NCBI RefSeq assembly: GCF_902459465.1
Contig: NW_022985740.1
Location: 1 to 64,000, forward strand
Direction: 5' to 3'
Source of the DNA: Asterias rubens
Taxonomy: Eukaryota
DNA length: 64,000 nt
Shown one piece after another: positions 785-62,776 of the stretch. Position 1 is the first letter of the stretch; the number at the start of each line of letters is the position of its first letter. The notes below the pieces were generated by a model, which worked only from the letters and a program-made list of their open reading frames with translations, ran no database searches and was not told the DNA's origin. Position numbers and translations under genes: made by a program.

Positions 785-3365
785 ATGGACGTTCAGCGTG
801 GACATTGCTGACGTTGTAAGGTTCAACTGGAACAGACCATTCACTGTCCTGATTGCAAGATGGCGGAGTATTGTAGCTCAATATGTGAAGAAGGAGACAG
901 AGCTAGACATATGAGTAGAGAGTGCCCATTATTTGGAACAAGATCATGCAAGAAATGCAAAAAGAAGGGTACAATGAAAGATGTATGTCTGCTTTAATTT
1001 CCATCATTATCCCCTAATCATTTACAAAAAAGGCAATTTACATATAATGCTCTGTTGATTTTGTTGCAAAAGAGAGGAATCATTCTCTAAATGTATTGTA
1101 AAACGAAACTTGGCAAATTGTTTTACTATGTTTCTTACTTAAAGGCAGTGGACACTATTAGTAATTACTCAAAATAATTATTATCATAAAACCTCACTTG
1201 GTAATGAGTAATGGGGAGAGATATTGATAGTATAAAACATTGTGAGAAAGGGCTCCCTCTGAAGTGACAAAGTTTTCGAGAAAGACGTAATTTTCCATAA
1301 ATTTGATTTCGAGACCTCAAGTTTAGAATTTGAGGTCTCGAAATCAAGCATCTGAAAGCACACAACTTCGTCTGACAAGGGTTTTTTGTTTTTTCATAGT
1401 TACCTCGCAACTTTGACGACCAATTGAGCTTGAATGTTCACAGGTGTGTTATTTTATGTTAATGTTGAGATACACAAAGTGAGAAGACTGGTCTTTGACA
1501 ATTACCAATAGTGTCCACTGTTTTTAAGAAATGTTGTTGTCTCTTGCATGCATGTCATGTAAAAGCTAGAAGAGACTATAATCAGAGTTCTAGAGGTACA
1601 CTTGCACAAAAACTAGGAGGAGGATTCATAACGAAGAGATTTAAAATTACACATGGAAAAGTAACAAATTCTCCAACAGAGAGTTGATATATTTTATTCT
1701 GCTATAATGTCTTTTCAGTGTTCAGGTTGCAACCATGCATGGTACTGTAACAGTGAGTGTCAAACAAGTGATTGGGCCAATCATGAGGAGGAATGCAAGG
1801 AGAAAAAGGCAAGAACAAAAAGAGCAGCAGAAGATTTAATAGAAGAATACATTGGTATGCGTACTGACAGACTTGATGATTTCCCTTATTATTTTGGAAA
1901 CTGCATCGCCAAAGACTTCCTTCAACTTGATAACAATGAATGGTCTGATGGGTCAATATAGAAAACTGACTTGAACAGAGATTTTCATATTTTGTCAGCT
2001 GGTTGCGGAGACTTACGCAACACTGTTTTGACTATTGCTTCCCTTCCTGCCAAGTACCAGGGAAGTCTTTACATCACTCTCAATGACTTTGACCCTTTTG
2101 TCATGGCAAGGAATGTCTTATTTCTCTTTATGTTGGTTCGGTTTGCAGACACTGAGGGAATTGAGAGCAGTCTGACTACCATCTGGTACTCAGTTCACAT
2201 TGCTAAGAAAGAGTATGACTTGATCAAGACCAGCTTAGATGAGCTCATTCAGATGACCCCTCAAAGTCTCACAGAGGACTCTCAGATGACCCCTCAAAGT
2301 CTCACAGAGGTCACTCAAGGGTTGGTCAAAGTTAAAGATAAAGATCTTTCAGTTATGAGTCAAGTTTGGAACAAATGGAGATCACTAGAATGCCAACGAG
2401 GGGAACCATCCTCAATCAATCTCAGACAACAAAGACAAACTGTACTTGATGAATCAAAAAAAAAAATTGAACAAGAGCAGGGTAAGGGCAATCATTTAGA
2501 GTCATCCAGTGTTGAAAAGCAAATTGAAGAATGGTTTGACCATGGGATGTTCCTCCCCAAAGAAGAAAAACAAGAACTAATGTCATTTGATAATCCGACA
2601 CTAACAGGGCGTGAAGTTGATCACGATATCACTAAAAACCTGAGCCCAAAGGATCATGCCTTTGTGTACTGTGTCCAAGCAGTTTTACATCCCTTCAGAG
2701 TGTGGGATTGCTTGAGAGTGAGGAAGTTTGATACCAAACCCTACCCAACCCCTATGGAAATGTACCACAATTATATCACAAATCTCCTAAAGAAGGTAAA
2801 AAGTTTCATCCAGAATCGAAGACTTTTTATTCAAGTGTCACTGGCCAATTGTATGGACTTTCCTTCAGTACATAATGCTCTGAAGATGCCAAACTATGAT
2901 CGCATCTTCACATCCAATATTGCCGACTATGTTGGGCTTGCCAAGCTCCTGCAAGACTTCAAACCACTTCTTAATTCTAGTAATCACTACTCAGTACTTA
3001 TTACTGAGACAATGATCTGGGCACAATTTCTATTTAAATCATACTGCCTGCACACAGGCATGAATTATGATGACCTTAAGAAAAATTTGGGACTCCATAA
3101 CTGGATGGACTACTTAGATAATGCCCCTTACTTTGTTGGCTATCTGCGTGCACAAATCATGGCAGGGGGTCTTGGGATACTACCATTGACTAATGTGCCA
3201 TCATTTGAAGACGTGATGAAGTACAATGGTCTAGAAATGCGTGACTTTCGTAAGAAGCAGAATCGTCTTGTTCCATTTCAGTATCGAGTGAATAATCGTG
3301 ATTTGACCCTGATCAATGTAAATGACAGAGCAGTGGAGTGGTGTCTGCCACACACTGATGGCTAA
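785..3365 (+). pseudogene. Copy 1 (type A): double-MYND Zn finger + DUF4470-like gene, pseudogene
   Basis: Exons 785-982 (GAT|GT) and 1719-3365 (CAG|TGT), phase 0. TGG>TGA at 809-811 (W9*) and AAG>TAG at 1959-1961 relative to paralogs. In-frame 33-nt duplication near 2249-2310. Confidence 0.9.
1143..1523. mobile_element. MITE family A (Kolobok/piggyBac-like, TTAA target) in copy 1 intron
   Basis: TIR AGGCAGTGGACACTATT(A/G)GTAATT, TTAA on both sides, internal hairpin GATTTCGAGACCTCAA...TTGAGGTCTCGAAATC. Confidence 0.85.
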
Positions 3366-16535: not shown

Positions 16536-19500
16536 ATGGATGTTCAGCGTGGACATTGCTGGCGTTGTGAAGTTCAACTGGAACAGACCATTCACTGTCC
16601 TGATTGCAAGATGGCGGAGTATTGTAGCTCAACATGTGAACACAGAGACAGAGTTAGACATAGGAGTAGAGAGTGCCCGTTATTTGGAACAAGATCATGC
16701 AACAAATGCAATAAGAAGGGTACAATGAAACAGGTAGGATGTATGTTGGCTTCTCCATGTAGCCCTACTTGAAGGTAAAACCCACAAATCTTTTCGAAAA
16801 AGCCCATTCTTATATGTGGTTTCCCCACCATTGTGGTTTCCCCACCACTGGTCAGGGCAGAAACCACTAAAATCTGACATTTTGGGGGAAAAATACCACC
16901 TTTTTGGTAAAAATATGTCATAACCATGTCAATTCTCATCACACATATGCAAATTTGGTATCAAAATGATGAGAATTGCATGCTGAAATCAATTCTTTTG
17001 TCAAAAATAAATTTTCTGAAATGTAAGTCACTGTAATTTTTATTATGTTATCGTGACCTTTGACCCAGTTTTTAAAATAATGTATCATTCCAAAAATCAT
17101 TGAAATAAAATCACTTAATAGAGCATGTCTTCCTCTATCAGAATCCACTAAGAAACAGTTGGGCTCTTTAAAATTTACAACTTTATGACTATTTTTGTAC
17201 AAGTCACCATGATCTTTAATATGTTGTCGTGACCTTTGACCCAATTTTTGAAACAAAACACCATTCCAAAAATCAACAAAATAAAAATCACTTGATAGAG
17301 CATGTCTTCCTCTATCAGAATCAACCAAGAAACAACTTGGCTCTTCAAAATTTACAATTTTATGACTATTTTTGTACAGTTGTTAGGTTACAAATTAGTC
17401 AATTTATATACTTACATAATAAATCCACCAACAAAACTCACTCTTCTGTTTTTAAAGTTACTTAAAGTGTTCATGGTGTGATTTTTGTCTTGTTGATGGC
17501 TGATGTGGTTTAACCAGAACCAGAATTTAAATTATCAGCAGTGACGCACCCAGGATTTTTTATTTTGGGGGGTGGGCCATATTTTCCCCAAATATTTCTT
17601 TCGAAGATTGTAAAATCAAAAATCAAAACAAATCAAACAAACAAATTGAATACCTTGGAGGGCTGGGATCAATCCCCAAAAAGGTGGTATTTTACCCTAA
17701 AAATGTCAGATTTTAGTGGTTTCTGCCCTGACCACATGGTAAGTCCGATCGGGCTAAAAATTTGTGTGCATTCATTGCTCATTAGGACCTACAAGCACAG
17801 CAATTTTTATCCAAATCGGAAGACATGAGGTAAAAAAGTGTGTCGGTCTGACATGGAATGACCCATTTAGAAAAAAGTGTTACCTTCAGGCACTATCAGT
17901 ATCCCTATTTTACATCTTTTTGGTTCAAATCTAGGAATCACAAAAACATAATTTCCAAAATCAAGGTTTATATATTAAATCATTCATTCATTCTTTTCAG
18001 TGTGGAGGTTGCAACTACGCATGGTACTGTGACAAGGAATGTCAAAGAAGTGATCGGGCCAATCATAAGAAGTTATGCAAGAAGACAAAGGCAACTACAA
18101 CAACAGCAGCAGCTAAACTAACACAAAAACACATTTTGATGCGTACCGATAGACTTGGTGGTGCCCCTTATTATTTTGGAAACTGCATTGCTGAAGACTT
18201 CTTGCAACTTGCTAACAATGAATGGTCTGATGGGTCAATAAAGAAAACTGACTTGAACAGAGATTATCATATATTGTCAGCTGGTTGCGGAGACTTACGC
18301 AACACTGTCTTAACAGCAGCTTCCCTTCCTGCCAGGTACCAAGGAAGTCTTTACATCACTCTCAATGACTTTGACCCTTTTGTCATGGCAAGGAATGTCT
18401 TGTTTCTCTTTATGTTGGTTCGGTTTGCAGACACTGAGGGAATTGAGAGCAGTCTGACTACCATCTGGTACTCAGTTCACATTACAAAGAAAGAGTATGA
18501 CCTGATCAAGACCAGCTTGGATGAGCTCATTCAGATGACCCCTCAAAGCCTCCAAGAGGTCACTCAAGGGTTGGTCAAAGTTCAAGGTGGAGATCTTGCA
18601 GTCATGAGTCAAGTTTGGGACAAATGGAGATCACTAGAATGCCAACGAGGGAAACCATCCTCAATAAATCTCAGAAAACAAAGAAAAACTGCATTTGATC
18701 AATGTAATAAAGAAATTGGTAAGGGAAGGAAATTCATTCACACAAATTATTTAGAGTCATCCAGTGTTGAAAAGCAAATTGAAGAATGGTTTGACCATGG
18801 GATGTTCCTCCCCAAAGAAGAAAAACAAGAACTAATGTCATTTGATAACCCAACACTAACAGGGCGTGAAGCTGACATACCTCAGGGTTGTATAACTGAA
18901 ATGAAATTCTCAGTCACTCAAAATATAAGCCCAAAGGATTATGCCTTTGTGTACTGTATCAAAACATATTTACATCCCTTCAAAGTGTGGGATTGCTTGA
19001 GAGTGAGGGAGTCCGAGACCAGACCCTGCTCATCCCCTATGGTGATGTACCACAACTACATCACAAAACTCCTCCAGAAATTCAAACATCTCATCCAGCA
19101 ACAACGGCTTTCTTTCCAAATTTCTCTGGCTAACTGTATGGACTTTCCTTCGATTCATAAGTCTCTTAAAATGTCAAACTATGACAGGATATTCACATCC
19201 AATCTCAGTGACTACATCGGCTTTGCCAAGCTCCTGCAAAACTTCAAACCCCTTCTTAACCAAAGTAACCGCTCCTCAGTAATTGTTACTGAGACGATAA
19301 ACTGGATTGAATTTTTCCCTAGCGACACATCTGACAAAGTTGAACTAATTGCTGAATCATACTTAAAGGACACAGGCAGGAATCCTGCCACCCTTCTTGC
19401 AAACCTAACTGACGTAGCACCGCCTACCTGGTTAGAGTACTTCGACAATGCCCCTTACTTCATTGCATATCTGCGTGCACAAATCATGGCAGGGGGTCTT

Positions 19501-19701
19501 GGGATACCACCATTGACTTATTTGCCATCATTTGGTGAAGTGATGAAGTACAATGGTCTAGAAATGCGTGACTTTCGTAAGAAGCTGAATCGTCTTGTCC
19601 CATTTCAGTATCGAACCAATGCTCGTGACTTGACCAGAATAAATGCAACTGACAGAGCAGTAGAGTGGTATCTGCCACATCATCTCATCATCATCATCTA
19701 G
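16536..19701 (+). CDS. Copy 2 (type B): tandem MYND Zn-finger / DUF4470-like putative SAM-binding protein, 632 aa
   Basis: Exons 16536-16733 and 18001-19701, phase-0 GT-AG intron, no stops. Motifs CxxC..CxxC..YCxxxC..HxxxC, ILSAGCGDLRN, LNDFDPFVMARN, DRIFTSNLSDY. The last codons come from the LINE tail. Confidence 0.85.
16853..17730. mobile_element. Non-autonomous DNA transposon in copy 2 intron
   Basis: ~55-bp TIR beginning CAGGGCAGAAACCACTAAAATCTGACATTT. Flanking direct repeat ACCAC(A)TGGT. Internal ~176-bp tandem duplication (units begin 17053 and 17229). Confidence 0.75.
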
Positions 19702-24928: not shown

Positions 24929-27900
24929 ATGGACGTTCAGCGTGGACATTGCTGGCGTTGTGAAGTTCAACTGGAACAGACCATTCACTGTCCTGATTGC
25001 AAGATGGCGGAGTATTGTAGCTCAACATGTGAACACAGAGACAGAGTTAGACATAGGAGTAGAGAGTGTCCGTTATTTGGAACAAGATCATGCAACAAAT
25101 GCAATAAGAAGGGTACAATGAAAGAGGTATGTTGTGAATTTGGAAAGTTCAAGACAAGATTCTCACATATTGTCATGAATGCTGAATATAAGTCAAGCTC
25201 AATTCCTTACATCATAAAACTTAATGTGATGAATTGGGGACTATGGGCCACTAGGTGGCAGCAGACATACCAGAGTCTAATAATTTACATTGTTAAAACA
25301 CTGGGTAGATTTTTGCTGTTTATACACAGAGAGCAAGTTCTAGTGCGCACATTTAGCCGACTACTGACCAGAAACGACCATGCGCAGTGATGCACTCACT
25401 CGAAAGACTCGTTTGGAACCTTAGTCAACCATCGGTACCACTGTATTCAACACTCCATTGCCTTCTGTGTTTTCGCTATAGTACCACTGGTTCCCTTCTG
25501 CCCTTTACACATATTAGTATGGAACAGGCTGTTGGGACCAAGGAAGAAACCATGGGCATGAGGCTGGTTCCAAAAATGGTCTACCACAGCAGTCAACCAA
25601 TGGTCGACCAGCCTGGTTTTAGTAAAAAAAAGTCAATCTTTAGTTAACCTTGGTGCACAATCGAACTTGCTCATAGCCTTGGTAGAACGCCAGTATTCTC
25701 AAAACTACAACTAACACCCTCAGAATAAAGGCAACAAATGTTATAAAACATTTTTTCATTGGTTTACCTCATTGAAACTGAATCTTCGTTCACGTTCCTT
25801 GAATATCATACTTGCAGACTGTCTGGTTGAACAAATCTTTAAAATGTTTTGAGCACACTTTATTTTCATAAATAAAGTGAGAATTGGAGGGTTTTAAGAC
25901 ATCTATCAAAAACGTCTATTTTTATGACTCTTTTTTTAATTTAAGAAGTGTATCAAACATTCTCTATATCCTATCTAATGCGCTGCGTTCTTGACGTAGT
26001 GGCACTATACAAATGCCCTATATGTATGTTTGTATGTATGAATCTGTGTGTAAATTAATATTATGTGCATCTAATTCATGTGCATGCTAAAAAATATGCA
26101 CAACAATGCGAAAAAAGGGCACAGTCTAGAAGAATGTTTCAAAAACTTTTCAAGCACCAAGAAAAGATTTGTTTGAAGGATCGTTTTTGTCAAACCTTAT
26201 ACTTTGATAGCTTTGAAATACTGCATTGAAACTTCTTTTTTACAGTGGGGAGGTTGCAACAATACATGGTGCTATTGTTTAATGTTTTCTCTGGTTTTGA
26301 TAAATAACAATTGTGATTTTTTATTGGAAAAAAATGAATACACTAACCACTTCAAAATACTATCTATTTCTTTCAGTGTGCAGGTTGCAACATAGCATGG
26401 TACTGTAACAGAGAGTGTCAAAGTAGTGATTGGGTCAACCATAAAGCTTTTTGCATCAAGGCCAAGGAAGACATCAAATCAACAGCAGCTCAAATTGGAC
26501 TATTAAACTTCAGAATGCAAAAAGACAGACAGGGTGGTTCCCCTTATTATTTGGGAAACACTATTGCCAAAGACTTCTTGCAACTTGATAACAATGAATG
26601 GTCTGATGGGTCAATAAAGAAAACTGACTTGAACAGGGACTATCATATATTGTCAGCTGGTTGCGGAGACTTACGCAATACTGTCTTGACAGCAGCTTCC
26701 CTCCCTGCCAGGTACCAGGGAAGTCTTTACATCACTCTCAATGACTTTGACCCTTTTGTCATGGCAAGGAATGTCTTGTTTCTCTTTATGTTGGTTCGGT
26801 TTGCAGACACTGAGGGAATTGAGAGCAGTCTGACTACCATCTGGTACTCAGTTCACATTACAAAGAAAGAGTATGACTTGATCAAGACCAGCTTGGATGA
26901 GCTCATTCAGATGACCCCTCAAAGTCTCACAGAGGTCACTCAAGGGTTGGTCAAAGTTCAAGGTAAAGATCTTGCAGTCATGAGTCAAGTTTGGGACAAA
27001 TGGAGATCACTAGAATGCCAACGAAAGATACAATCCTCAATAAATCTCAGAAAACAAAGACAAACTGCATTTGAGAAATTTAGACAAAAGCATGGGGATA
27101 GTGTGAAGTATTGCTATACCAATCCTTCACAGTCACCTGCTGTTAAAAAGCAAACTGAAGAATGGTTTGACCATGGTTTGTTCCTCCCCAAAGAGACGAA
27201 ACAAGGGACAATGTCATTTGATAACCCAACACTAACCGGACGTGGAGCTTCAACGGATCCAGGTTTTGACATGGTGATTTTGAAAAATCAAAATGCAAGC
27301 CCAAAGGATTATGCCTTTGATTACTGTGTCAGACCAGATTCACATCCCTTCAGAGTGTGGGATTGCTTGAGAGTGAGGGAGTCTGAGACCAGACCCTACG
27401 CAACCCCTATGGTGATGTACCACAACTACATCACAAACCTGATACAGAAAGTCAAACATCTAATTCAGCAGAGAAGACTTTATATGCAAGTTTCTCTGGC
27501 CAACTCTATGGATTTTCCTTCAATTCACAAGTCTCTTAAGATGTCCAACTATGACCGCATCTTCACATCCAATCTTGCTGACTATATTGGTTTTGGGAAG
27601 CTTTTACAAACATTTAAACCCCTTCTAAACCAAAGTAACTGCTCCTCAGTAATTGTTACTGAAACAATAAACTGGGCTGAATTTCTACCTCAGGCTGTCT
27701 GTAAACCTGAGCACAAAGAATACAAAAGATGTATTGTAGCATATTGTCTGGATACAGGCAGAGATTTAAAAAATCTACTACGTAAATTTGATATTGGACT
27801 TCATACCTGGATGGACTACTTTGATAGTTCCGCTTACTTTCTTGCATATCTGCGTGCACAAATTATGGGCGGGGGTTTCGGGGTACCACCATTGACTAAA

Positions 27901-28071
27901 GTGCCTTCATTTGGCGAAGTGATGAAGTACAATGGTCTAGAAATGCGTGACTTTCGTAAGAAGCTGAATCGTCTTGTACCATTTCAGTATCGAGTCAATG
28001 CTCGTGATTTGAACGTTATAACTGCAACTGACAGAGCAGTGGAGTGGTGTCTGCCACACACTGATGGCTAA
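24929..28071 (+). CDS. Copy 3 (type C): tandem MYND / DUF4470-like protein, 630 aa
   Basis: Exons 24929-25126 and 26377-28071, phase 0, open throughout. Confidence 0.87.
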
Positions 28072-28731: not shown

Positions 28732-29286
28732 GACTTTCCTTCAGTACATAATTCTCTAAAGATGCCAAACTATGATCGCATCTTCACATCCAATATTGCT
28801 GACTATGTTGGGTTTGCCAAGCTCTTGCAAGACTTCAAACCACTTCTTAATTCTAGTAATCACTACTCAGTACTTGTTACTGAGACAATAAACTGGTATA
28901 GACTTTTCATTCAGCCTGGGAATGAACTACAAGTTCAACTTTGTACTGAAGCTTACATTCAGGACACAGGCAGGAATTTAGCTGATCTTCTTGTGCTTGA
29001 CACTGATGTAGCACCTTCTACCTTGTTAGAGTACTTTGATAATGCCCCTCACTTTGTTGGCTATCTGCGTGCACAAATCATGGCAGGGGGTCTTGGGATA
29101 CCACCATTGACTTATTTGCCATCAAATGGTGAAGTGATGAAGTACAATGGTCTAGAAATGCGTGACTTTCGTAAGAAGCTGAATCGTCTTGTCCCATTTC
29201 AGTATCGAACCAATGCTCGTGACTTGACCAGAATAACTGCAACTGACAGAGCAGTAGAGTGGTATCTGCCACATACTGATCACTAA
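28732..29286 (+). pseudogene. 5'-deleted mosaic fragment of exon 2
   Basis: Starts abruptly at GACTTTCCTTCAG, fused to the copy-3 3' flank (the same flank continues differently at 51619). Type-A-like 5' part, unique variable segment, type-B-like end ...LPHTDH*. Confidence 0.88.
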
Positions 29287-32811: not shown

Positions 32812-35403
32812 ATGGACGTTCAGCGTGGACATTGCTGGCGTTGTAAAGTTAAACTGGAACAGACCATTCACTGTCCTGATTGCAAGATGGCGGAGTATTG
32901 TAGCTCAACATGTGAAAACAGAGACAGAGTTAGACATAGGAGTAGAGAGTGCCCGTTATTTGGAACAAGATCATGCAACAAATGCAACAAGAAGGGTACA
33001 ATGAAAGAGGTATGTCTGCTTTAATTTCCATCATTATCCCCTAATCATTTACAAAAAAGGCAATTTACATATAATGCTCTGATGATTTTGTTGCAAAAGA
33101 GAGGAATCATTCTCTAAATGTATTGTAAAACGAAACTTGGCAAATTGTTTTACTATGTTTCTTACTTAAAGGCAGTGGACACTATTAGTAATTACTCAAA
33201 ATAATTATTATCATAAAACCCCACTTGGTAATGAGTAATGGGGAGAGATATTGATAGTATAAAACATTGTGAGAAAGGGCTCCCTCTGAAGTGACAAAGT
33301 TTTCGAGAAAGACGTAATTTTCCATAAATTTGATTTCGAGACCTCAAGTTTAGAATTTGAGGTCTCGAAATCAAGCATCTGAAAGCACACAACTTCGTCT
33401 GACAAGGATTTTTGTTTTTTCATAGTTACCTCGCAACTTTGATGACCAATTGAGCTTGAATGTTCACAGGTGTGTTATTTTATGTTAATGTTGAGATACA
33501 CAAAGTGAGAAGACTGGTCTTTGACAATTACCAATAGTGTCCACTGTTTTTAAGAAATGTTGTTGTCTCTTGCATGCATGTCATGTAAAAGCTAGAAGAG
33601 ACTATAATCAGAGTTCTAGAGGTACACTTGCACAAAAACTAGGAGGAGGATTCATAACGAAGAGATTTAAAATTACACATGGAGAAGTAACAAATTCTCT
33701 AACAGAGAGTTGATATATTTTATTCTGCTATAATGTCTTTTCAGTGTGCAGGTTGCAACTATGCATGGTACTGTAACCAGGAATGTCAAAGAAGTGATTG
33801 GGCCAATCATATGAAGGAATGCAAGGAGAAAAAGGCAAGAACAAAAAGAGCAGCAGATGAATTAAGAAAAGAATACATTTCAATGCGTACTGACAGACTT
33901 AATGATTTCCCTTATTATTTTGGAAACTGCATTGCTAAAGACTTCTTGCAACTTGATAACAATGAATGGTCTGATGGGTCAATAAAGAAAACTGACTTGA
34001 ACAAAGATTATCATATATTGTCAGCTGGTTGCGGAGACTTACGCAATACTGTCTTGACAGCAGCTTCCCTTCCTGCCAGGTACCAGGGAAGTCTGTACAT
34101 CACTCTCAATGACTTTGACCCTTTTGTCATGGCAAGGAATGTCTTGTTTCTCTTTATGTTGGTTCGGTTTGCAGACACTGAGGGAATTGAGAGCAGTCTG
34201 ACTACCATCTGGTACTCAGTTCACATTACAAAGAAAGAGTATGACCTGATCAAGACCAGCTTGGATGAGCTCATTCAGATGACCCCTCAAAGTCTCACAG
34301 AGGTCACTCAAGGGTTGGTCAAAGTTCAAGGTAAAGATCTTGCAGTTATGAGTCAAGTTTGGAACAAATGGAGATCACTAGAATGCCAACGAGGGGAACC
34401 ATCCTCAATCAATCTCAGAAAACAAAGAAAAACTGTACTTGATGAATCCCAAAAAAAATATGAACAAAAGTGTGGTAAGGGCAATAAATTCCGTTATACA
34501 AATCCTTTAGAGTCACCCAGTGCTAAAAAGCAATTTGAAGAATGGTTTGACCATGGGATGTTCCTCCCCAAAGAAGAAAAACAAGAAACAATGTAATTTG
34601 ATAATCCGACACTAACAGGGCGTGAAGTTGATCTCCATTCCACTAAAAAGCCGAGCCCAAAGGATCATGCCTTTGTGTACTGTGTCCAAGCAGTTTTACA
34701 TCCCTTCAGAGTATGGGATTGCTTGAGAGTGAGGGAGTCTGAGAGGGAGTCTGAGAGGGAGTCTGAGACCAGACCCTACCCAACCCCTATGGTGATGTAC
34801 CACAACTACATCACAAAATTCCTCAAGACGGTAAAAAGCTTCATCCAGAATGGAAGACTTTTTATTCAAGTGTCACTAGCCAATTGTATGAACTTTCTTT
34901 CAGAACATATTTCTCTAAAGATGCCAAACTATGATCGCATCTTCACATCCAATATTGCCGACTATGTTGGGTTTGCCAAGCTCCTGCAAGACTTCAAACC
35001 ACTTCTTAATTCTAGTAATCACTACTCAGTACTTATTACTGAGACAATGATCTGGGCAGAAATTCTATCTAAACTGGAGAACACAGACTATAAACCTTGC
35101 ATTACATCATACTGCCGTGAAAATGGTGACATCCATAACTGGATGGAATACTTTGATAATGCCCCTCACTTTGTTGGCTATCTGCGTGCACAAATCATGG
35201 CAGGGGGTCCTGGGGTACAGTCATTGACTAATGTGCCATCGTTTGGTGAAGTGATGAAACACAATGGTCTACAAATGCGTAACTTTCGTAGGAAGCTGAA
35301 TCGTCTTGTTCCATTTCAGTATCGAGTGAATAATCGTGATTTGACCCTGATCAATTTAAATGACAGAGCAGTGGAGTGGTGTCTGCCACACACTGATGGC
35401 TAA
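32812..35403 (+). pseudogene. Copy 4 (type A): one premature stop (would give 349 aa)
   Basis: Exons 32812-33009 and 33745-35403. TCA>TAA at 34594-34596; the frame is otherwise intact. Triplicated 12-nt unit at 34731-34766. Confidence 0.85.
33170..33549. mobile_element. MITE family A in copy 4 intron
   Basis: Same site and orientation as the copy at 1143. Confidence 0.85.
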
Positions 35404-39429: not shown

Positions 39430-42400
39430 ATGGATGTTCAGCGAGGACATTGCTGGCGCTGTGAAGTTTCACTGGAACAGACCATTCACTGTCCTGATTG
39501 CAAGATGGCGGAGTATTGTAGCTCAACATGTGAACACAGAGACAGAGTTAGACATAGGAGTAGAGAGTGCCCGTTATTTAGAACAAGATCATGCAACAAA
39601 TGCAAAAATAAGGGTACAATGAAAGAGGTATATCTGCTTTTATTTCAATCATTATCCCCTATTCATTTTAAAGCCATTATACACTTTCGGTACAGGGGGG
39701 GAAAAAAAGTTTTACAAATAGGGTTTACAGAAGGTAATGGTGAAAGACTTCTCTTGAAATATTGTTTCATAAAATGCTTTACTTTTTGAGAAAACATTAA
39801 AACAATATATATTCTAGATAGCGAGAATTACGAATTTATTATAAACACATGTCATGACACGACGTAACGCGCGAAAACAGAAGTGTGTTTTCCCGTTATT
39901 TTCTCCCAACTCCGATGACTGATTGAGCCTAATTTTTAACAGGTTTGTTATTTTATAAATAAGTTGTGATACACGAAGTGTGGGACTTGGACAATACTGT
40001 ATACCGAAAGTGTATAATGGCTTTAAAAAGAAAATTTACATAATGCTCTGTTGATTTTGTTGCAAAAGAGGGGAATAATTCAAACAAAACTTGGCAAATT
40101 ATTTTCCTCTATTATGTTGCTTAAGGCCCTGTCATTCCTTGACGTAAACAAATTTCTCTAAAACGTTGGCATACGCTGACCTATCGATAGATTTTTCAAT
40201 TTTGAGAGCGTATACAAAGCGTATTCATAACGAGTTCGACGTATGCATACCGTATTAGTAACTTACATAAAACGTTTCCAAAACGAATGCTTAGCGTGTT
40301 GCCGGCGTTCACAACTTATGTCCTACGATAGTGTAACTACTGCATAGCGCGCAACAGCGTATTGCCGACGATCATATGTATTAGCCTACAAAGTGGGTGT
40401 CTCTCTGCTGTGAACCCAGTTTGTATTTACCGATTCACATAAACGCTCCCAATACGCCATAATACGGAAGCTGTAAGTTAGAAACACGTTCAGTAAGTTC
40501 TGTGGTTGTCCGAAATACGTCAAATACGTTCGACATAGGTTAAAAGGACGTTACAGATGGGTTAGAAATACGTTTTAGGTACGCTAGACATTATCTCGAC
40601 GTATGTCAACTTATGATTAACTTACAAGTAACGTGTGTGAACGTGTGGCAACAATCTTATAACTTACCTACAACTTATGCGGAACTTCTGAGCCACACGC
40701 TGGCATATGTCGAAAATTTGTGTGCATGCACAACATTTCTCGACGCATGCCTTACTTCGATGTATATCAGCGTGTTTCAGCTTGCTCTTAACTTATACAA
40801 AACTTACCCATAAATTATTCGACGTACGCCAGCGTAATTGCCTAAATTTTCATACGTCGGCATACGCTGGCTTAAGCGTCAAGGTGTGACAGGGCCTTTA
40901 CTTTAAATTATGTCTATTGCATGCATGGCATGTAAAAGTCGCATCCCCTTAAGCTGATTCCCTGGCTGCCGCTTCCCATGTTGTATCGTAATTTGGGTGT
41001 GATCCCTGGCTACACGGCAGTTAACGGTTGTATGGCTTCTGACTGGCACCCCCGAACAAAGATATTGACAAAATAGGGACACCGCCAACATAGGGCTAGA
41101 TAGCTCAGTTGGTAGAGTGCCGGCACGTTAGTCCGGAGATCGTTGGTTCGAACACACTCTTCAATTCTTTGTTCAACCCCAAAAATCATATTTCATTTTG
41201 CTATTATTATTTTTCAGTGTGCACGTTGCAACTACGCATGGTACTGTAACCAGGAATGTCAAAGAAGTGATTGGGCCAATCATAAGGAGTTATGCAAGAA
41301 GACAAAGGCAACTACAACAACAGCAGCTGATAAACTAACACAAAAACACATTTTTATGCGTACCGATAGACTTGGTGGTGCCCCTTATTATTTTGGAAAC
41401 TGCATTGCTGAAGACTTCTTGCAACTTGCTAACAATGAATGGTCTGATGGGTCAATAAAGAAAACTGACTTGAACAGAGATTATCATATATTGTCAGCTG
41501 GTTGCGGAGACTTACGCAACACTGTCTTGACAGCAGCTTCCCTTCCTGCCAGGTACCAGGGAAGTCTGTACATCACTCTCAATGACTTTGACCCTTTTGT
41601 CATGGCAAGGAATGTCTTGTTTCTCTTTATGTTGGTTCGGTTTGCAGACACTGAGGGAATTGAGAGCAGTCTGACTACCATCTGGTACTCAGTTCACATT
41701 ACAAAGAAAGAGTATGACTTGATCAAGACCAGCTTGGATGAGCTCATTCAGATGACCCCTCAAAGTCTCACAGAGGTCACTCAAGGGTTGGTCAAAGTTC
41801 AAGGTGAAGATCTTGCAGACATGAGTCAAGTTTGGGACAAATGGAGATCACTAGAATGCCAACGAAAGAAACAATCCTCAATAAATCTCAGAAAACAAAG
41901 AAAAACTGTGTTTGATCAATATAATAAAGAAATTGAACAAAACATTGGTAAGGGAAGGGAATTCGTTCACACAAATCAGTTAGAGTCATCCAGTGCTGAA
42001 AAGCAATTTGAAGAATGGTTTGACCATGGGATGTTCCTCCCCAAAGAAGAAAAACAAGAACTAATGTCATTTGATAACCCGACACTAACAGGGCGTGAAG
42101 CTGACATACCTTTTGGTTGTATAACTGAAATTAAATTCTCAATCAATCAAAATATAAGCCCAAAGGATTATACCTTTGTGTACTGCATCAAACAAGATTC
42201 ACATCCCTTCAAAGTGTGGGATTGCTTGAGAGTGAGGGAGTCTGAGACCAGACCCTGCTCATCCCCGATGGTGATTTACCACAACTACATCACAAACCTC
42301 CTCCAGAAATTCAAACATCTCATCCAGCAACAACGGCTTTCTTTCCAAATTTCTCTGGCTAACTGTATGGACTTTCCTTCGATTCATAAGTCTCTTAAAA

Positions 42401-42957
42401 TGTCAAACTATGACAGGATATTCACATCCAATCTCAGTGACTACATCGGCTTTGCCAAGCTCCTGCAAAACTTCAAACCCCTTCTTAACCAAAGTAACCG
42501 CTCCTCAGTAATTGTTACTGAGACGATAAACTGGATTGAATTTTTGCCTAGCGACACATCTGACAATTTTAAACTAAGTGCTGAATCATACTTAAAGGAT
42601 ACAGACAGGAATCCTGCCACCCTTCTTGCAAACCTAACTGACGTAGCACCGACTACCTGGTTAGAGTACTTCGACAATGCCCCTTACTTCATTGCATATC
42701 TGCGTGCACAAATCATGGCAGGGGGTCTTGGGATACCACCATTGACTTATTTGCCATCATTTGGTGAAGTGATGAAGTACAATGGTCTAGAAATGCGTGA
42801 CTTTCGTAAGAAGCTGAATCGTCTTGTTCCATTTCAATATCGAGTCAATGCTCGTGACTTGACCAGAATAACTGCAACTGACAGAGCAGTGGAGTGGTAT
42901 CTGCCACATAATGAGCACTTGGGCCCCGGTCCCACTGGACCCAGCCTTGATCTCTAA
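39430..42957 (+). CDS. Copy 5 (type B): tandem MYND / DUF4470-like protein, 645 aa
   Basis: Exons 39430-39627 and 41218-42957, phase 0, open. The C-terminal GPGPTGPSLDL* is read from an inserted element. Confidence 0.85.
39672..40022. mobile_element. MITE family B variant in copy 5 intron
   Basis: Both TIRs carry the same variant AGCCATTATACACTTTCGGTA; TTAA flanks. Confidence 0.85.
40124..40897. mobile_element. PIF/Harbinger-like non-autonomous element (774 bp)
   Basis: TIR AGGCCCTGTCA(TT/CA)CCTTGACG. Exact TTA TSD at 40121-40123 and 40898-40900. CpG-rich interior. Confidence 0.85.
40952..41187 (+). mobile_element. tRNA-derived SINE-like repeat with 5' leader
   Basis: tRNA-like segment 41093-41164 (loop AC-GTT-AG). 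The leader matches the minus-strand copy at 14335-14478. Ends ~30 nt before the copy-5 acceptor. Confidence 0.75.
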
Positions 42958-47822: not shown

Positions 47823-50800
47823 ATGGATGTTCAGCGTGGACATTGCTGGCGTTGTGAAGTTCAACTGGAACAGACCATTCACTGCCCTGATTGCAAGATG
47901 GCGGAGTATTGTAGCTCAATATGTGAACACAGAGACAGAGTTAGACATAGGAGTAGAGAGTGCCCGTTATTTGGAACAAGATCATGCAACACATGCAATA
48001 AGAAGGGTACAATGAAAGAGGTATGTTGTGAATTTGGAAAGTTCAAGACAAGATTCTCACATATTGTCATGAATGCTGAATATAAGTCAAGCTCAATTCC
48101 TTACATCATAAAACTTAATGTGATGAATTGGGGACTATGGGCCACTAGGTGGCAGCAGACATACCAGAGTCTAATAATTTACATTGTTAAAACACTGGGT
48201 AGATTTTTGCTGTTTATACACAGAGAGCAAGTTCTAGTGCAGACATTTAGCCGACTACTGACCAGAAACGAACATGCGCAGTGACGCACTCACTCGAAAG
48301 ACTCGTTTGGAACCTTAGTCAACCATCGGTACCACTGTATTCAACACTCCATTGCCTTCTGTGTTTTCGCTATAGTACCACTGGTTCCCTTCTGCCCTTT
48401 ACACATATTAGTATGGAACAGGCTGTTGGGACCAAGGAAGAAACCATGGGCATGAGGCTGGTTCCAAAAATGGTCTACCACAGCAGTCAACCAATGGTCG
48501 ACCAGCCTGGTTTTAGTAAAAAAAAGTCAATCTTTAGTTAACCTTGGTGCACAATCGAACTTGCTCATAGCCTTGGTAGAACGCCAGTATTCTCAAAACT
48601 ACAACTAACACCCTCAGAATAAAGGGAACAAAAGTTATAAACATTTTTTCATTGGTTTACCTCATTGAAACTGAATCTTCGTTCACGTTCCTTGAATATC
48701 ATACTTGCAGACTGTCTGGTTGAACAAATCTTTAAAATGTTTTGAGCACACTTTATTTTCATAAATAAAGTGAGAATTGGAGGGTTTTAAGACATCTATC
48801 AAAAACGTCTATTTTGATGACTCTTTTTTTAATTTAAGAAGTGTATCAAACATTCTCTATATCCTATCTAATGCGCTGCTTTCTTGACGTAGTGGCACTA
48901 TACAAATGCCCTATATGTATGTTTGTATGTATGACTCTGTGTGTAAATTAATATTATGTGCATCTAATTCATGTGCATGCTAAAAAATATGCACAACAAT
49001 GCGAAAAAAGGGCACAGTCTAGAAGAATGTTTCAAAAACTTTTCAAGCACCAAGAAAAGATTTGTTTGAAGGATCGTTTTTGTCAAACCTTATACTTTGA
49101 TAGCTTTGAAATACTGCATTGAAACTTCTTTTTTACAGTGGGGAGGTTGCAACATTACATGGTGCTATTGTTTAATGTTTTCTCTGGTTTTGATAAATAA
49201 CAATTGTGATTTTTTATTGGAAAAAAATGAATACACTAACCACTTCAAAATACTATCTATTTCTTTCAGTGTGGAGGTTGCAACATAGCATGGTACTGTA
49301 ACAGAGAGTGTCAAAGTAGTGATTGGGTCAACCATAAAGCTTTTTGCATCAAGGCCAAGGAAGACATCAAATCAACAGCAGCTCAAATTGGACTATTAAA
49401 CTTCAGAATGCAAAAAGAGGGTGGTTCCCCTTATTATTTGGGAAACACTATTGCCAAAGACTTCTTGCAACTCTCTAACAATGAGTGGTCTGATGGGTCA
49501 ATAAAGAAAACTGACTTGAATAAAGATTATCATATATTGTCAGCCGGTTGCGGAGACTTACGCAACACTGTCTTGACAGCAGCTTCCCTTCCTGCCAGGT
49601 ACCAAGGAAGTCTTTACATCACTCTCAATGACTTTGACCCTTTTGTCATGGCAAGGAATGTCTTGTTTCTCTTTATGTTGGTTCGGTTTGCAGACACTGA
49701 GGGAATTGAGAGCAGTCTGACTACCATCTGGTACTCAGTTCACATTACAAAGAAAGAGTATGACCTGATCAAGACCAGCTTGGATGAGCTCATTCAGATG
49801 ACCCCTCAAAGTCTCACAGAGGTCACTCAAGGGTTGGTCAAAGTTCAAGGTAAAGATCTTGCAGACATGAGTCAAGTTTGGGACAAATGGAGATCACTAG
49901 AATGCCAACGAAAGATACAATCCTCAATAAATCTCAGAAAACAAAGACAAACTGCATTTGAGAAATTTAAACAAAAGCATGGGGATAATGTGAGGTATTG
50001 TTATACCAATCCTTTACAGTCACCTGCTGTTAAAAAGCAAACTGAAGAATGGTTTGACCATGGTTTGTTCCTCCCCAAAGAGACGAAACAAGGGACAATG
50101 TCATTTGATAACCCAACACTAACGGGACGTGGAGCTTCAGCAGCTCCAGGTTATGAAACGCTAGTTAGGGATTGGAATGCACCAAAGGCAAGCCCAAAAG
50201 ATTTTGCCTTTGAGTACTGCATCAGACCAGATTCACATCCTTTCAAAGTGTGGGATTGCTTGAGAGTGAGGGAGTCCGAGACCAGACCCTACCCAACCCC
50301 TATGGTGATGTATCACAACTACATCACAAACCTGATACAGAAAGTCAAACATCTAATTCAGCAGAGAAGACTTTATATCCAAGTTTCTCTGGCCAATTCT
50401 ATGGACTTTCCTTCAATTCATAAGTCTCTTAAGATGTCCAACTATGACCGCATCTTCACATCCAATCTTGCTGACTATATTGGTTTTGGGAAGCTTCTAC
50501 AAACATTTAAACCCCTTCTAAACCAAAGTAACTGCTCCTCAGTAATTGTTACTGAAATAATAAACTGGATTGCATTTCTACCTCAGGCTCTCTGTAAACC
50601 TGAGCACAAAGAATATCAAAGATGTATTGTAGCATATTGTCTGGATACTGGCAGAGATTTAAAAAATCTTATGCGTAAATTTGATATTGGACTCCATACC
50701 TGGATGGACTACTATGATAGTTCCCCTTACTTTCTTGCATATCTGCGTGCACAAATTATGGGCGGGGGTTTCGGGGTACCACCATTGACTAAAGTGCCTT

Positions 50801-50964
50801 CATTTGGTGAAGTGATGAAGTACAATGGTCTAGAAATGCGTGACTTTCGTAAGAAGCTGAATCGTCTTGTTCCATTTCAGTATCGAGTCAATGCTCGTGA
50901 TTTGAACATTATAACTGCAACTGACAGAGCAGTGGAGTGGTATCTACCACACACTGATGGCTAA
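47823..50964 (+). CDS. Copy 6 (type C): tandem MYND / DUF4470-like protein, 630 aa
   Basis: Exons 47823-48020 and 49270-50964, phase 0, open. Confidence 0.87.
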
Positions 50965-53625: not shown

Positions 53626-56156
53626 ATGGACGTTCAGTGTGGACATTGCTGGCGTTGTGAAGTTCAACTGGAACAGACCATTCAATGCCCCGATTGCAAG
53701 ATGGCAGAGTATTGTAGCACAACATGTGAACACAGAGACAGAGTTAGACATAGGAGTAGAGAGTGCCCGTTATTTGGAACAAGATCATGCAACAAATGCA
53801 AAAAGAAGGGTACAATGAAAGAGGTATGTCTGCTTTAATTTCCATCATTATCCCCTAATCATTTACAAAAAAGGCAATTTACATATAATGCTCTGTTGAT
53901 TTTGTTGCAAAAGAGAGGAATCATTCTCTAAATGTATTGTAAAACGAAACTTGGCAAACTGTTTTACTATGTTTCTTACTAAAGGCAGTGGACACTATTA
54001 GTAATTACTCAAAATAATTATTATCATAAAACCTCACTTGGTAATGAGTAATGGGGAGAGATGTTGATAGTATAAAACATTGTGAGAAAGGGCTCCCTCT
54101 GAAGTGACAAAGTTTTTGAGAAAGACGTAATTTTCCATAAATTTGATTTCGAGACCTCAAGTTTAGAATTTGAGGTCTCGAAATCAAGCATCTGAAAGCA
54201 CACAACTTCGTCTGACAAGGGTTTTTTGTTTTTTCATAGTTATCTCGCAACTTTGACGACCAATTGAGCTTGAATGTTCACAGGTGTGTTATTTTATGTT
54301 AATGTTAAGATACAAAAAGTGAGAAGACTGGTCTTTGACAATTACCAATAGTGTCCACTGTTTTTAAGAAATGTTGTTGTCTCTTGCACAAAAACTAGGA
54401 GGAGGATTCATAACAAAGAGATTTAAAATTACACATGGAAAAGTAACAAATTCTCTAACAAAGAGTTGATATATTTTATTCTGCTATAATGTCTTTTCAG
54501 TGTGCACGTTGCAACTATGCATGGTACTGTAACAGAGAGTGTCAAACAAGTGATTGGGCCAATCATAAGGCGGAATGCAAGGAGACAAAGGCAACAAATA
54601 AAAAATTAGCAGCTCTTTTAAGAGAAGAATACACTTCAATGCGTACTGACAGACTTGATAATTTCCCTTATTATTTTGGAAACTGCATTGCTAAAGACTT
54701 CTTGCAACTTGCTAACAATGAATGGTCTGATGGGTCAATAAAGGAAACTGACAGGGATTTTCATATATTGTCAGCTGGTTGCGGAGACTTACGCAACACT
54801 GTCTTGACAGCAGCTTCCCTCCCTGCCAGGTACCAGGGAAGTCTTTACATCACTCTCAATGACTTTGACCCTTTTGTCATGGCAAGGAATGTCTTGTTTC
54901 TCTTTATGTTGGTTCGGTTTGCAGACACTGAGGGAATTGAGAGCAGTCTGACTACCATCTGGTACTCAGTTCACATTACAAAGAAAGAGTATGACTTGAT
55001 CAAGACCAGCTTGGATGAGCTCATTCAGATGACCCCTGAAGGTCTCCAAGAGGTCACTCAAGGGTTGGTCAAAGTTCAAGGTGAAGATCTTGCAGTCATG
55101 AGTCAAGTTTGGGACGAATGGAGATCACTTGAATGCCAACGAGGGAAACGATCCTCAATCAATCTCAGAAAACAAAGACAAACTGTACTTGATAAATCGA
55201 AAAAAGAAATTGAACAAGAGCATGGTAAGGGCCAAGTATTACGTTATACAAATCATTTAGAGTCATCCAGTGCTGAAAAGCAATTTGAAGAATGGTTTGA
55301 CCATGGGATGTTCCTCCCCAAAAAAGAAAAACAAGAACTAATGTCATATGATAATCCGACACTAACAGGGCGTGAAGCTGATCTCCCAATCACTAAAAAG
55401 CAGAGCCCAAAGGATTATGCCTTTGTGTACTGTATCAGCACGTTTTTCCATCCCTTCAGAGTGTGGGATTGCTTGAGAGTGAGGGAGTCTGAGACCAGAC
55501 CCTACCCAACCCCTATGGAAATGTACCACAATTATATCACAAAACTACTAAAGAAGGTAAAAAGTTTCATCCAGAATGGAAGACTTTTTATTCAAGTCTC
55601 ACTGGCCAATTGTATGGACTTTCCTTCAGTACATAATGCTCTGAAGATGCCAAACTATGATCGTATCTTCACATCCAATATTGCCGACTATGTTGGGTTT
55701 GCCAAGCTCCTGCAAGACTTCAAACCACTTCTTAATTCTAGTAATCACTACTCAGTACTTATTACTGAGACAATGAACTGGGCAGATTTTATACATGAAC
55801 CTAAGGACACAACAGACTATAAACCTTGCATGAAATCATACTGCCTGGATACAGACCGGGATTATAATGACCTTAACACTGGACCTTTCATCTGGATGGA
55901 ATACTTTGATAATTCCCCTATCTTTCTTGCATATCTGCGTGCACAAATCATGGCAGGGGGTGTTGGGGTGCAGCCATTGACTTATTTGCCATCATTTGGT
56001 GAAGTGATGAAGTACAATGGCCTAGAAATGCGTGACTTTCGTAAGAAGCTGAATCGTCTTGTCCCATTTCATCATCGAGTGAATAATCGTGATTTGACCC
56101 TGATCAATGTAACAGACAGAGCAGTGGAGTGGTGTCTGCCACATTCTGATGGCTAA
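53626..56156 (+). CDS. Copy 7 (type A): tandem MYND / DUF4470-like protein, 617 aa
   Basis: Exons 53626-53823 and 54501-56156, phase 0, open. The only intact type-A copy. Confidence 0.88.
53983..54363. mobile_element. MITE family A in copy 7 intron
   Basis: Same site as the copies at 1143 and 33170; left flank CTAA. Confidence 0.85.
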
Positions 56157-62715: not shown

Positions 62716-62732
62716 ATTATTATTATTATTAA

Positions 62733-62776
<44 letters not shown>

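What the first reader, a model, noticed from the sequence alone, without database searches (positions are those of the whole stretch)
27241..27840. Three hypervariable segments diverge faster than the adjacent introns
Seen: variation concentrates after LECQR (V1), after NPTLTGR (V2) and after ET(I/M)(N/I)W (V3). Copies 3 and 6 have nearly identical introns (1250 vs 1249 nt), yet V2 reads STDPGFDMVILKNQNASPK vs SAAPGYETLVRDWNAPKASPK. Copies 1, 4 and 7 have near-identical introns and 3' flanks but V3 segments of different length and sequence. Inference: diversifying selection or cassette exchange on specificity-determining loops around a constant catalytic scaffold, as in recognition or effector families.
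Basis: partly seen in the sequence, partly recalled or inferred. Interest (0 to 1): 0.85.

Follow-up and report, generated by a model that had tools for sequence, protein, structure and literature searches.

The report
Patchwork starfish gene family, variable loops
Eight neighbouring copies of a starfish gene of unknown function differ most in three loop-coding stretches, mainly because the copies swap pieces of coding DNA and the loops are weakly constrained; a common way for gene families to evolve, with no sign here of selection for novelty.

Summary
The window is an Asterias rubens scaffold with eight tandem two-exon genes (two MYND fingers plus a DNAAF3-like, methyltransferase-fold body). 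V1, V2 and V3 vary in 72, 100 and 96% of columns, against 20-45% elsewhere. The introns of copies 3 and 6 are 1250 and 1249 nt and differ by 0.8%, yet V2 differs by about 30%.

The pattern is wider than reported. Both whole exons, synonymous sites included, are 3-10 times more diverged than introns and flanks between sister copies.

Most of these exon differences carry alleles also present in other paralogues (52 of 71 observed, 24 expected). The nearest relative switches every 60-200 nt, and a recombination test gives P<0.0005.

The V2 of copy 6 is ancestral: a chromosomal copy and three A. amurensis genes share it. Copy 3 alone carries a derived 165-nt tract.

dN/dS in V1-V3 is 0.84-1.06 and never significantly above 1. 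V2 is the least confident loop of the model.

Verdict: patchwork gene conversion plus weakly constrained loops. Exchange of pieces is supported; diversifying selection is not shown. Two earlier notes of this scan on this same window already flagged the identical core and the mosaic copies. This is an ordinary mechanism in an undescribed family.

The parts
24929..25126 (+). Copy 3, exon 1 (66 codons: first MYND finger and the first half of the second)
   Evidence: Translation and GT donor. Pfam zf-MYND, E 3e-5.
25127..26376 (+). Copy 3 intron, 1250 nt
   Evidence: Donor and acceptor read. It differs at 10 of 1249 sites from the copy 6 intron at 48021-49269.
26377..28071 (+). Copy 3, exon 2 (564 codons plus stop), intact. 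It equals the protein LOC117306597 of Asterias rubens.
   Evidence: 100% match to P0001. Pfam DUF4470, E 8e-19.
26542..27024 (+). Core block (exon-2 residues 56-216), homogenised in DNA across all paralogues
   Evidence: Third-position distance is 0.01-0.11 among all array copies here, against 0.17-0.34 between subfamilies in block i2. dS is 0.04-0.11 between subfamilies. A tract extension specific to one species is seen in a distant paralogue.
27025..27144 (+). V1 of copy 3 (exon-2 residues 217-256; protein residues 283-322)
   Evidence: 72% variable columns. dN/dS 0.84. Mean pLDDT 63-69 for residues 301-320.
27244..27297 (+). V2 of copy 3 (exon-2 residues 290-307; protein residues 356-373)
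   Evidence: 100% variable columns. dN/dS 1.06. Residues 363-369 have pLDDT below 50, and the segment is coil.
27237..27400 (+). Derived tract of copy 3 that spans V2 and its conserved flanks: a likely conversion tract
   Evidence: At almost every copy 3 versus copy 6 difference in this tract, the chromosomal copy and two A. amurensis genes agree with copy 6. Positions 27286-27319 match copies 2 and 5 at 30/32 and 31/34.
27676..27804 (+). V3 of copy 3 (exon-2 residues 434-476; protein residues 500-542)
   Evidence: 96% variable columns. dN/dS 0.99. Helices 513-526 and 530-535 are modelled with confidence; residues 531-540 average pLDDT 62.
47823..50964 (+). Copy 6, sister of copy 3: exon 1 47823-48020, intron 48021-49269, exon 2 49270-50964; intact. 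It keeps the ancestral V2.
785..3365 (+). Copy 1 (subfamily A): exon 1 785-982, exon 2 1719-3365. A pseudogene with one stop in each exon, a 33-nt duplication and a 45-nt deletion in V3.
32812..35403 (+). Copy 4 (subfamily A): exon 1 32812-33009, exon 2 33745-35403. It has one in-frame stop, a 24-nt repeat expansion and a 39-nt deletion in V3.
   Evidence: Patchwork painting.
53626..56156 (+). Copy 7 (subfamily A): exon 1 53626-53823, exon 2 54501-56156. The reading frame is intact, but the protein is not in the protein database.
16536..19701 (+). Copy 2 (subfamily B): exon 1 16536-16733, exon 2 18001-19701. Its last codons are replaced where a retroelement is inserted.
39430..42957 (+). Copy 5 (subfamily B): exon 1 39430-39627, exon 2 41218-42957. 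Exon 2 is 96% identical to copy 2, but the intron and 5' flank are unrelated to those of copy 2.
61945..64000 (+). Copy 8 (subfamily D), cut by the window end. It has a frameshifting deletion in exon 1 and a 1-nt insertion in exon 2.
28732..29286 (+). Orphan 3' fragment of a further copy. Its V3 equals that of a chromosomal paralogue.
   Evidence: 98.5% identical to L001:26054-27517.

Best explanation
**Origin of the array.** The array is young. A block holding three older gene types (A, B, C) was duplicated recently, leaving introns and flanks of sister copies only 1-2% apart.

**What has happened since.** The coding exons have exchanged short tracts with the other family members by non-allelic gene conversion and unequal recombination. 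Only the exons are similar enough between gene types to pair. This exchange does two things:
1. It keeps about 480 nt of the core nearly identical in DNA in every copy.
2. It drops foreign patches into otherwise near-identical sister copies.

**Why V1-V3 stand out.** V1, V2 and V3 are loops or insertions of a methyltransferase-like fold under weak constraint (dN/dS about 1). They have therefore drifted far apart between gene types. Each lies between anchors conserved in DNA. When a tract spanning one of them is swapped, a sharp spike of divergence appears next to an almost unchanged intron.

**Shown versus inferred.**
- Shown: the recombination signal, the excess of shared alleles, the derived tract in copy 3, and dN/dS near 1.
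- Inferred: that exchange ran into the exons rather than the introns being homogenised, and that the loops are merely tolerant of change rather than selected for it.
For: 1. **Islands of divergence at both exons.**
   - Copies 1 and 4: 5' flank K=0.008, exon 1 0.069, intron 0.008, exon 2 0.094, 3' flank 0.017.
   - Copies 3 and 6: intron 0.008 against exon 2 0.043.
2. **Synonymous sites rise too.** dS is 0.05-0.18 in exon blocks of sister copies and 0.33-0.53 in V3 of the A copies, against 0.008-0.02 in introns.
3. **Alleles shared with other family members.** Both alleles of a sister-copy difference occur in other family members at 52/71, 74/121 and 109/155 sites. New mutation would give 24, 33 and 45. 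In the core the count is 10/14 against a null of 0.11, P=2e-7. The 19 private differences between copies 3 and 6 (1.1%) match the intron rate.
4. **Recombination test.** PHI P<0.0005 in three data sets. The nearest neighbour switches every 60-200 nt.
5. **Block-wise affiliation changes**. One A. amurensis gene has a C-type 5' half and V2 joined to an A-type middle. Copy 8 shares its N-terminus with an A. amurensis gene that has different V1 and V2.
6. **Derived tract in copy 3.** Its V2 lies in a derived tract at 27237-27400. The V2 of copy 6 recurs in the chromosomal copy and in three A. amurensis genes.
7. **Ongoing conversion into a distant paralogue.** Positions 370-579 equal the array consensus in both species. 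The identical tract reaches 5' to about 309 in A. rubens only, with 18 clustered differences between the orthologues.
8. **Selection measures.** dN/dS is 0.84, 1.06 and 0.99 in V1-V3, against 0.25-0.68 elsewhere.
Against: - No donor was found for the 5' half of copy 3's V2, nor for the V3 versions of copies 1, 4 and 7. Their best matches are 42-50 of 60.
- In V2 and V3 the shared-allele test has no power, because its null is already about 0.5.
- Within-subfamily pairs give V dN/dS of 2.3-2.9 (copies 2 and 5), though not significantly.
- V2 lies between invariant motifs (N349, T351, T353 and D395), which would also suit a functional loop.
- The window is an unplaced 86-kb scaffold, and some 'paralogues' may be diverged haplotypes.
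Confidence: 0.7

Rival explanations
1. Diversifying selection. V1-V3 are specificity loops around the pocket, and amino-acid change in them is favoured, as in recognition or effector families. Exchange of tracts only supplies the raw material.
For: - V dN/dS exceeds that of the rest of the gene 2-4 fold.
- Copies 2 and 5 with V pooled give 2.56, P=0.078.
- V2 is bracketed by invariant motifs.
- The same three zones vary across the whole echinoderm family.
- All indels in the V segments of intact copies are in frame.
Against: - dN/dS is 0.84-1.06 on 14 intact copies and never significantly above 1.
- Synonymous divergence rises equally.
- V2 is almost unchanged across four subfamily-C genes of two species.
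- V2 is identical in an orthologue pair whose V dN/dS is 0.31.
- V2 is modelled as a low-confidence coil.
Confidence: 0.12
2. The reverse direction. The sister copies are old, and their introns and flanks were homogenised by conversion, while selection kept the exons different. I recall this being proposed for the human red and green opsin genes; I did not check that literature here.
For: Exons are more diverged than introns in every sister pair. Many exon alleles are shared with A. amurensis genes and are therefore old.
Against: - Homogenisation would have to cover many kilobases of flank and the intron while skipping a 198-nt exon and a 1.7-kb exon in each of three pairs.
- Selection on protein would not preserve synonymous differences.
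- The exons are not tree-like but patchworks of several gene types.
Confidence: 0.08
3. Decay and loose constraint only. The V differences arose in place by ordinary mutation in loops that tolerate anything, helped by pseudogene decay in copies 1 and 4, without any exchange.
For: Copies 1, 4 and 8 are broken. V dN/dS is about 1. V2 is modelled as a low-confidence coil.
Against: At the intron rate of about 0.4% per lineage, roughly 0.05 synonymous changes are expected in copy 3's V2. About 2.5 are seen, plus pure synonymous changes in the flanks of the tract. In V3 of the A copies dS is 0.33-0.53 beside introns at 1-2%.
Confidence: 0.05
4. Assembly artefact. The unplaced scaffold mixes haplotypes or collapsed paralogues, which would create false patchworks.
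For: The window lies on an 86-kb unplaced scaffold. It is 96-99.9% similar to parts of the chromosomal array. The chromosomal locus holds an assembly gap inside the array.
Against: The same patchwork is seen in the chromosome-level A. amurensis assembly. Five copies keep long open frames. A chimeric assembly has no reason to place its divergence boundaries at exon edges.
Confidence: 0.05

Closest known systems
Dynein axonemal assembly factor 3 (DNAAF3; Pfam DUF4470 plus DUF4471)
   Same: Pfam DUF4470 match, E 8e-19. The predicted body (residues 120-630) matches the DNAAF3 models of ten species, E 1e-11 to 3e-8, TM by hit mostly 0.47-0.56 (0.30 for the alga).
   Different: - Two N-terminal MYND fingers are present.
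- There is no sequence match to DUF4471.
- Identity is 12-15%.
- The gene is tandemly expanded here, with at least 12 genes in A. rubens and about 30 in Patiria. From my own knowledge, not checked here, DNAAF3 is a single-copy cilia gene.

This is a paralogous branch, not an orthologue.
MYND-DUF4470 proteins of fungi and other eukaryotes (uncharacterised)
   Same: They share the domain architecture. The nearest Atlas clusters score 0.96 and carry zf-MYND and DUF4470; their members are mostly Ascomycota.
   Different: No function is known for any of them. Only three listed papers mention DUF4470, two of them on dynein assembly. The echinoderm expansion and its tandem patchwork are not described in the papers I could search.
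Class I SAM-dependent methyltransferases
   Same: All 50 best structural matches are of this fold, Z 8.7-10.2, with 160-230 residues aligned. After the first strand lies a glycine-rich loop (G161, C162, G163), and strand 2 ends in an invariant acidic residue, D189.
   Different: About 320 residues of insertions split the fold. No sequence-level methyltransferase family was hit. SAM binding and catalysis are untested.
SpTransformer (Sp185/333) genes of the purple sea urchin
   Same: An echinoderm family of small, tightly clustered two-exon genes, whose second exon is a mosaic and whose intron type goes with the exon-2 pattern (PMC8634487).
   Different: - There is no sequence relation.
- Exon 1 here encodes zinc fingers.
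- There are no internal repeat elements.
- The protein is a folded, enzyme-like body.
- No immune link is known for this family.

Membership tests
zf-MYND (PF01753) | Profile match above the curated cut-off, and the cysteine/histidine pattern of the finger | tested here: met
   24.4 and 36.9 bits against a cut-off of 22.7. Two fingers are present, the second split by the intron.
DUF4470 / DNAAF3-like | Profile match to PF14737 | tested here: met
   68 bits against a cut-off of 25.
DUF4470 / DNAAF3-like | Whole-body fold like DNAAF3 | tested here: met
   Foldseek E 1e-11 to 3e-8 against ten DNAAF3 models. Both sides are predictions.
DUF4470 / DNAAF3-like | C-terminal DUF4471 (PF14740) at the sequence level | tested here: not met
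   No PF14740 hit at E up to 0.01.
Class I SAM-dependent methyltransferase | Rossmann-like fold of the class | tested here: met
   The 50 best chains are all of this class, Z 8.7-10.2. Foldseek alone was weak.
Class I SAM-dependent methyltransferase | Glycine-rich motif I and an acidic residue at the end of strand 2 | tested here: inconclusive
   G161, C162 and G163 are nearly invariant and D189 is invariant, at the expected places. They were placed by eye, not by superposition.
Class I SAM-dependent methyltransferase | Binds SAM and transfers a methyl group | not testable with these tools
   This needs a binding or activity assay.
Family under diversifying selection | dN/dS significantly above 1 in the variable segments | tested here: not met
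   0.84, 1.06 and 0.99. The best pair gives P=0.078. Codon site models were not run.
Family under diversifying selection | Variable segments lie on a binding surface | not testable with these tools
   Only pLDDT and secondary structure are returned. V2 is a low-confidence coil.
Tandem family evolving by gene conversion (concerted and mosaic evolution) | A significant recombination signal and tracts whose alleles are shared with non-sister paralogues | tested here: met
   PHI P<0.0005. Shared alleles 52/71 against 24 expected. Tracts are shown.
SpTransformer-like immune mosaic genes | Sequence relation, a leader in exon 1, and repeat elements in exon 2 | tested here: not met
   Exon 1 encodes MYND fingers. 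No relation appears in the searches.

The most novel reading that the evidence does not exclude
The family is a combinatorial recognition system. Anchors conserved in DNA around V1, V2 and V3 act as homology arms, so that loop cassettes are reshuffled among dozens of tandem genes. This would give each starfish a varied set of MYND-tethered, methyltransferase-like binders or modifiers, an echinoderm parallel to other shuffled defence families.
Probability: 0.1. Interest if true: 0.75.

Novelty: new member of a known kind. Interest (0 to 1): 0.33.

Why it matters
The case shows that a sharp contrast between variable coding patches and near-identical introns does not by itself indicate selection for novelty. 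Here it follows from exchange that is confined to the exons, because only the exons are alike between gene types.

It also documents a large echinoderm expansion of an uncharacterised MYND plus DNAAF3-like family, with a clear example of exons that are more diverged than their introns. This is useful for annotating the family and as a caution for scans that look for hypervariable genes.

If the loops proved to be binding surfaces, the family would become a candidate recognition system.

Tried and rejected
**Searches that found nothing**
1. Donor for copy 3's V2. A short-word BLAST of 27241-27320 against the window and two loci found only the 3' match to copies 2 and 5. None of the 85 family proteins carries the 5' half.
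2. Relatives of copy 7 that might reveal its V3 donor. The best hit is only 78% identical, and no listed protein shares the V3 of copies 1, 4 or 7.
3. Literature. There is nothing on this family beyond DNAAF3 and one fungal genome paper.

**Methods that were weak or unavailable**
4. Foldseek against solved structures gave only weak hits. The fold became clear only with the AlphaFold DB and the wide structural search.
5. Codon site models (M7/M8, MEME) could not be run because no such program is installed. I used Nei-Gojobori pair counts and parsimony counts on region-specific trees instead.
6. The distance of V1-V3 from the putative pocket could not be computed, because model coordinates are not returned.

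**Ideas rejected**
7. A compensated frameshift as the cause of the V2 difference. The DNA alignment shows substitutions and one in-frame 6-nt indel.

**Not attempted**
8. The intron of the chromosomal sister copy lies in an assembly gap (L001:16898-17397). I left the gap as it is.
Full report
**What the locus is**

The window belongs to an 86-kb unplaced scaffold of the starfish Asterias rubens. The exon-2 product of copy 3 is 100% identical to LOC117306597.

It holds eight tandem copies of one gene on the + strand, plus an orphan 3' fragment. Each copy has two exons.
- Exon 1 has 66 codons. It encodes one MYND zinc finger and the first half of a second, which the intron splits.
- Exon 2 has about 560 codons. 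It carries a DUF4470 domain and a long tail.

The copies fall into four types:
- A: copies 1, 4 and 7.
- B: copies 2 and 5.
- C: copies 3 and 6.
- D: copy 8.

The A-B-C block is repeated.

State of the copies:
- Copies 3, 5, 6 and 7 have intact frames.
- Copy 2 is intact except for its last codons, which are replaced where a reverse-transcriptase element is inserted.
- Copy 1 has a stop in each exon.
- Copy 4 has one stop.
- Copy 8 has a frameshifting deletion in exon 1 and a 1-nt insertion in exon 2.

The family is large in echinoderms. It has about a dozen genes in A. rubens and about thirty in Patiria miniata, with members in crown-of-thorns starfish, brittle stars, sea cucumbers and feather stars.

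**The observation**

It is correct.
- The three anchors are present in every copy.
- V1, V2 and V3 vary in 72, 100 and 96% of alignment columns, against 20-45% elsewhere.
- The introns of copies 3 and 6 are 1250 and 1249 nt and differ at 10 sites (K=0.008).
- The 100-nt bin that holds V2 has 22 differences. These are substitutions plus one in-frame 6-nt indel, not a shifted frame.
- Copies 1, 4 and 7 have introns 0.8-2.0% apart and 3' flanks 1.2-2.4% apart, with V3 26-33% apart and of different lengths.

I add a fourth variable zone: the linker after the second MYND finger, which varies in 84% of columns.

**The contrast is not specific to the V segments**

Between sister copies both exons are islands of divergence.

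| Region | Copies 1 vs 4 (K) | Copies 3 vs 6 (K) |
|---|---|---|
| 5' flank | 0.008 | 0.052 |
| Exon 1 | 0.069 | 0.026 |
| Intron | 0.008 | 0.008 |
| Exon 2 | 0.094 | 0.043 |
| 3' flank | 0.017 | 0.015 |

These values come; the profile is. The 5' flank of copies 3 and 6 is an exception to the low non-coding divergence, and I did not follow it up.

Synonymous sites take part. dS is 0.05-0.18 in the non-V blocks and 0.33-0.53 in V3 of the A copies. Selection on amino acids cannot raise synonymous divergence ten-fold or more above the intron.

**Evidence for exchange of tracts**

1. *Shared alleles.* For most sister-copy differences in exon 2, both alleles also occur in other family members: 52 of 71, 74 of 121 and 109 of 155 sites. 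New mutation would give 24, 33 and 45. In the conserved blocks the excess is strong; in the core it is 10 of 14 against a null of 0.11, P=2e-7. The differences private to copy 3 or copy 6 number 19 (1.1%), close to the intron figure.
2. *Recombination test.* A pairwise homoplasy test is significant in three data sets (P<0.0005).
3. *Nearest neighbour.* It changes every 60-200 nt. Exon 2 of copy 4 is closest in turn to copy 5, copy 1, copy 7, an A. amurensis gene, a chromosomal copy, and copy 1 again, while its intron stays 99% identical to that of copy 1.
4. *Block-wise distances.* One A. amurensis gene joins a C-type N-terminus and V2 to an A-type middle block. Copy 8 shares its N-terminus exactly at third positions with an A. 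amurensis gene that has different V1 and V2.
5. *Copies 2 and 5.* Their second exons are 96% identical, but their introns and 5' flanks are unrelated.
6. *Exon 1 of copy 1.* It carries a variant shared with three A. amurensis genes.

**The constant core**

About 480 nt (26542-27024 in copy 3) differ by only 1-11% at third codon positions among all array copies of both species. The next conserved block differs by 17-34% between types. dS between types is 0.04-0.11 in the core and 0.53-0.67 in that block.

A distant paralogue, 63% identical overall, equals the array consensus over positions 370-579 in both species. In A. rubens alone the identical tract extends 5' to about position 309, giving 18 clustered differences from its own orthologue. 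This shows that conversion has continued since the species split.

The core is therefore constant partly because it is homogenised in DNA, in addition to strong protein constraint (dN/dS 0.25).

**The V2 difference between copies 3 and 6**

The V2 of copy 6 recurs almost unchanged in the chromosomal C-type copy and in three A. amurensis genes. V2 is therefore stable within this gene type.

From 27237 to 27400 nearly every difference is derived in copy 3. The tract runs from the conserved NPTLTG motif to the conserved VWDCLRVRESETRP stretch and includes pure synonymous changes.

Its 3' part matches the B type at 30 of 32 and 31 of 34 positions. No donor was found for its 5' part.

I read this as a single replacement of a tract, not as a run of selected point changes.

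**Selection**

Counts of synonymous and non-synonymous changes on region-specific trees of 14 intact Asterias copies give the following dN/dS:

| Region | dN/dS |
|---|---|
| V1 | 0.84 |
| V2 | 1.06 |
| V3 | 0.99 |
| N-terminal zone | 0.68 |
| Other regions | 0.25-0.42 |

No pair is significantly above 1. The highest is copies 2 and 5 with V pooled (2.56, P=0.078). An orthologue pair of a slower family member has V dN/dS of 0.31 and an identical V2.

The second half of that criterion, divergence no higher than in introns, is not met, and exchange explains why.

**Structure**

The model of copy 3 is confident: mean pLDDT 88.9, pTM 0.92.
- The body resembles DNAAF3 models (E 1e-11).
- All 50 best solved matches are class I SAM-dependent methyltransferases (Z 8.7-10.2).
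- A glycine-rich loop after strand 1 and an invariant aspartate at the end of strand 2 lie where that fold binds SAM.

The V segments map as follows:
- V2 is the least confident stretch of the whole model (residues 363-369 below 50) and is coil.
- V1 is a helix end plus a loop (pLDDT 63-69).
- V3 contains two confidently modelled helices and one weak loop.

Coordinates are not returned, so I could not measure how far the segments lie from the pocket. V2 lies between invariant motifs, which leaves a functional role open.

**Comparison with known systems, and verdict**

Tandem families that mix birth and death of copies with patchy gene conversion are well known. The sea urchin SpTransformer genes are an echinoderm example with two exons and a mosaic second exon (PMC8634487), but they are unrelated in sequence and in kind.

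The family itself is undescribed in the papers I could search.

Two other first-reader notes on this window, on the identical core and on the mosaic copies, agree with what I found independently.

The finding is real. Its best explanation is exchange of tracts plus weakly constrained loops. Selection for diversity remains possible but has no support here.

Noticed in passing
window 19698-21155 (- strand): A 485-codon open frame with a reverse-transcriptase domain (Pfam RVT_1, E 1e-37) abuts the end of copy 2 and replaces its last codons. The flank of copy 2 resumes at about 21272.
   Followed up: partly
window 12833-13524: A tandem repeat with a period of about 67 nt that gives long repetitive open frames on both strands. 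It lies in the spacer between copies 1 and 2.
   Followed up: no
window 39662-40032; also 3544-3838, 35581-35875, 38237-38547, 56335-56630, 62191-62335: A repeat of about 310 nt occurs in the copy 5 intron and in several flanks. In copy 5 it is bounded by 31-nt inverted repeats (39662-39692 and 40002-40032), like a small non-autonomous transposon.
   Followed up: no
window 16849-16907 and 17676-17734: A 59-nt inverted repeat (95% identical) inside the intron of copy 2.
   Followed up: no
window 34800-34830 (copy 4) and 2215-2250 (copy 1); coordinates approximate: In-frame expansions: a 24-nt repeat that adds SERESERE in copy 4, and a 33-nt duplication in the core of copy 1.
   Followed up: no
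L002, L003, L004 (A. amurensis CP134965.1, 18.50-18.58 Mb): The whole A. amurensis array lies inside the span of a gene on the opposite strand whose 305-residue product has PfkB and pyridoxal-kinase-type domains. The array is thus probably nested in one large intron.
   Followed up: no
L001 (A. rubens LR699102.1, 14.09-14.12 Mb): NCBI 'isoforms' X2, X4 and X5 of LOC117296567 differ as much as separate paralogues do. X5 and X4 correspond to two different tandem second exons (L001:17430-19130 and 24938-26610). This is either read-through splicing between neighbouring copies or merged gene models.
   Followed up: partly
window 53626-56156 (copy 7): Copy 7 has an intact two-exon frame, but no protein closer than 78% identity is in the protein collection. 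It seems not to be annotated as a gene.
   Followed up: partly
window 38677-39402 versus 60992-61918: The 5' flank of copy 5 resembles that of copy 8 (80-86% identity) and not that of its exon-2 sister, copy 2. The start of copy 5's intron resembles the A-type intron. This points to a recombination junction near the intron.
   Followed up: partly
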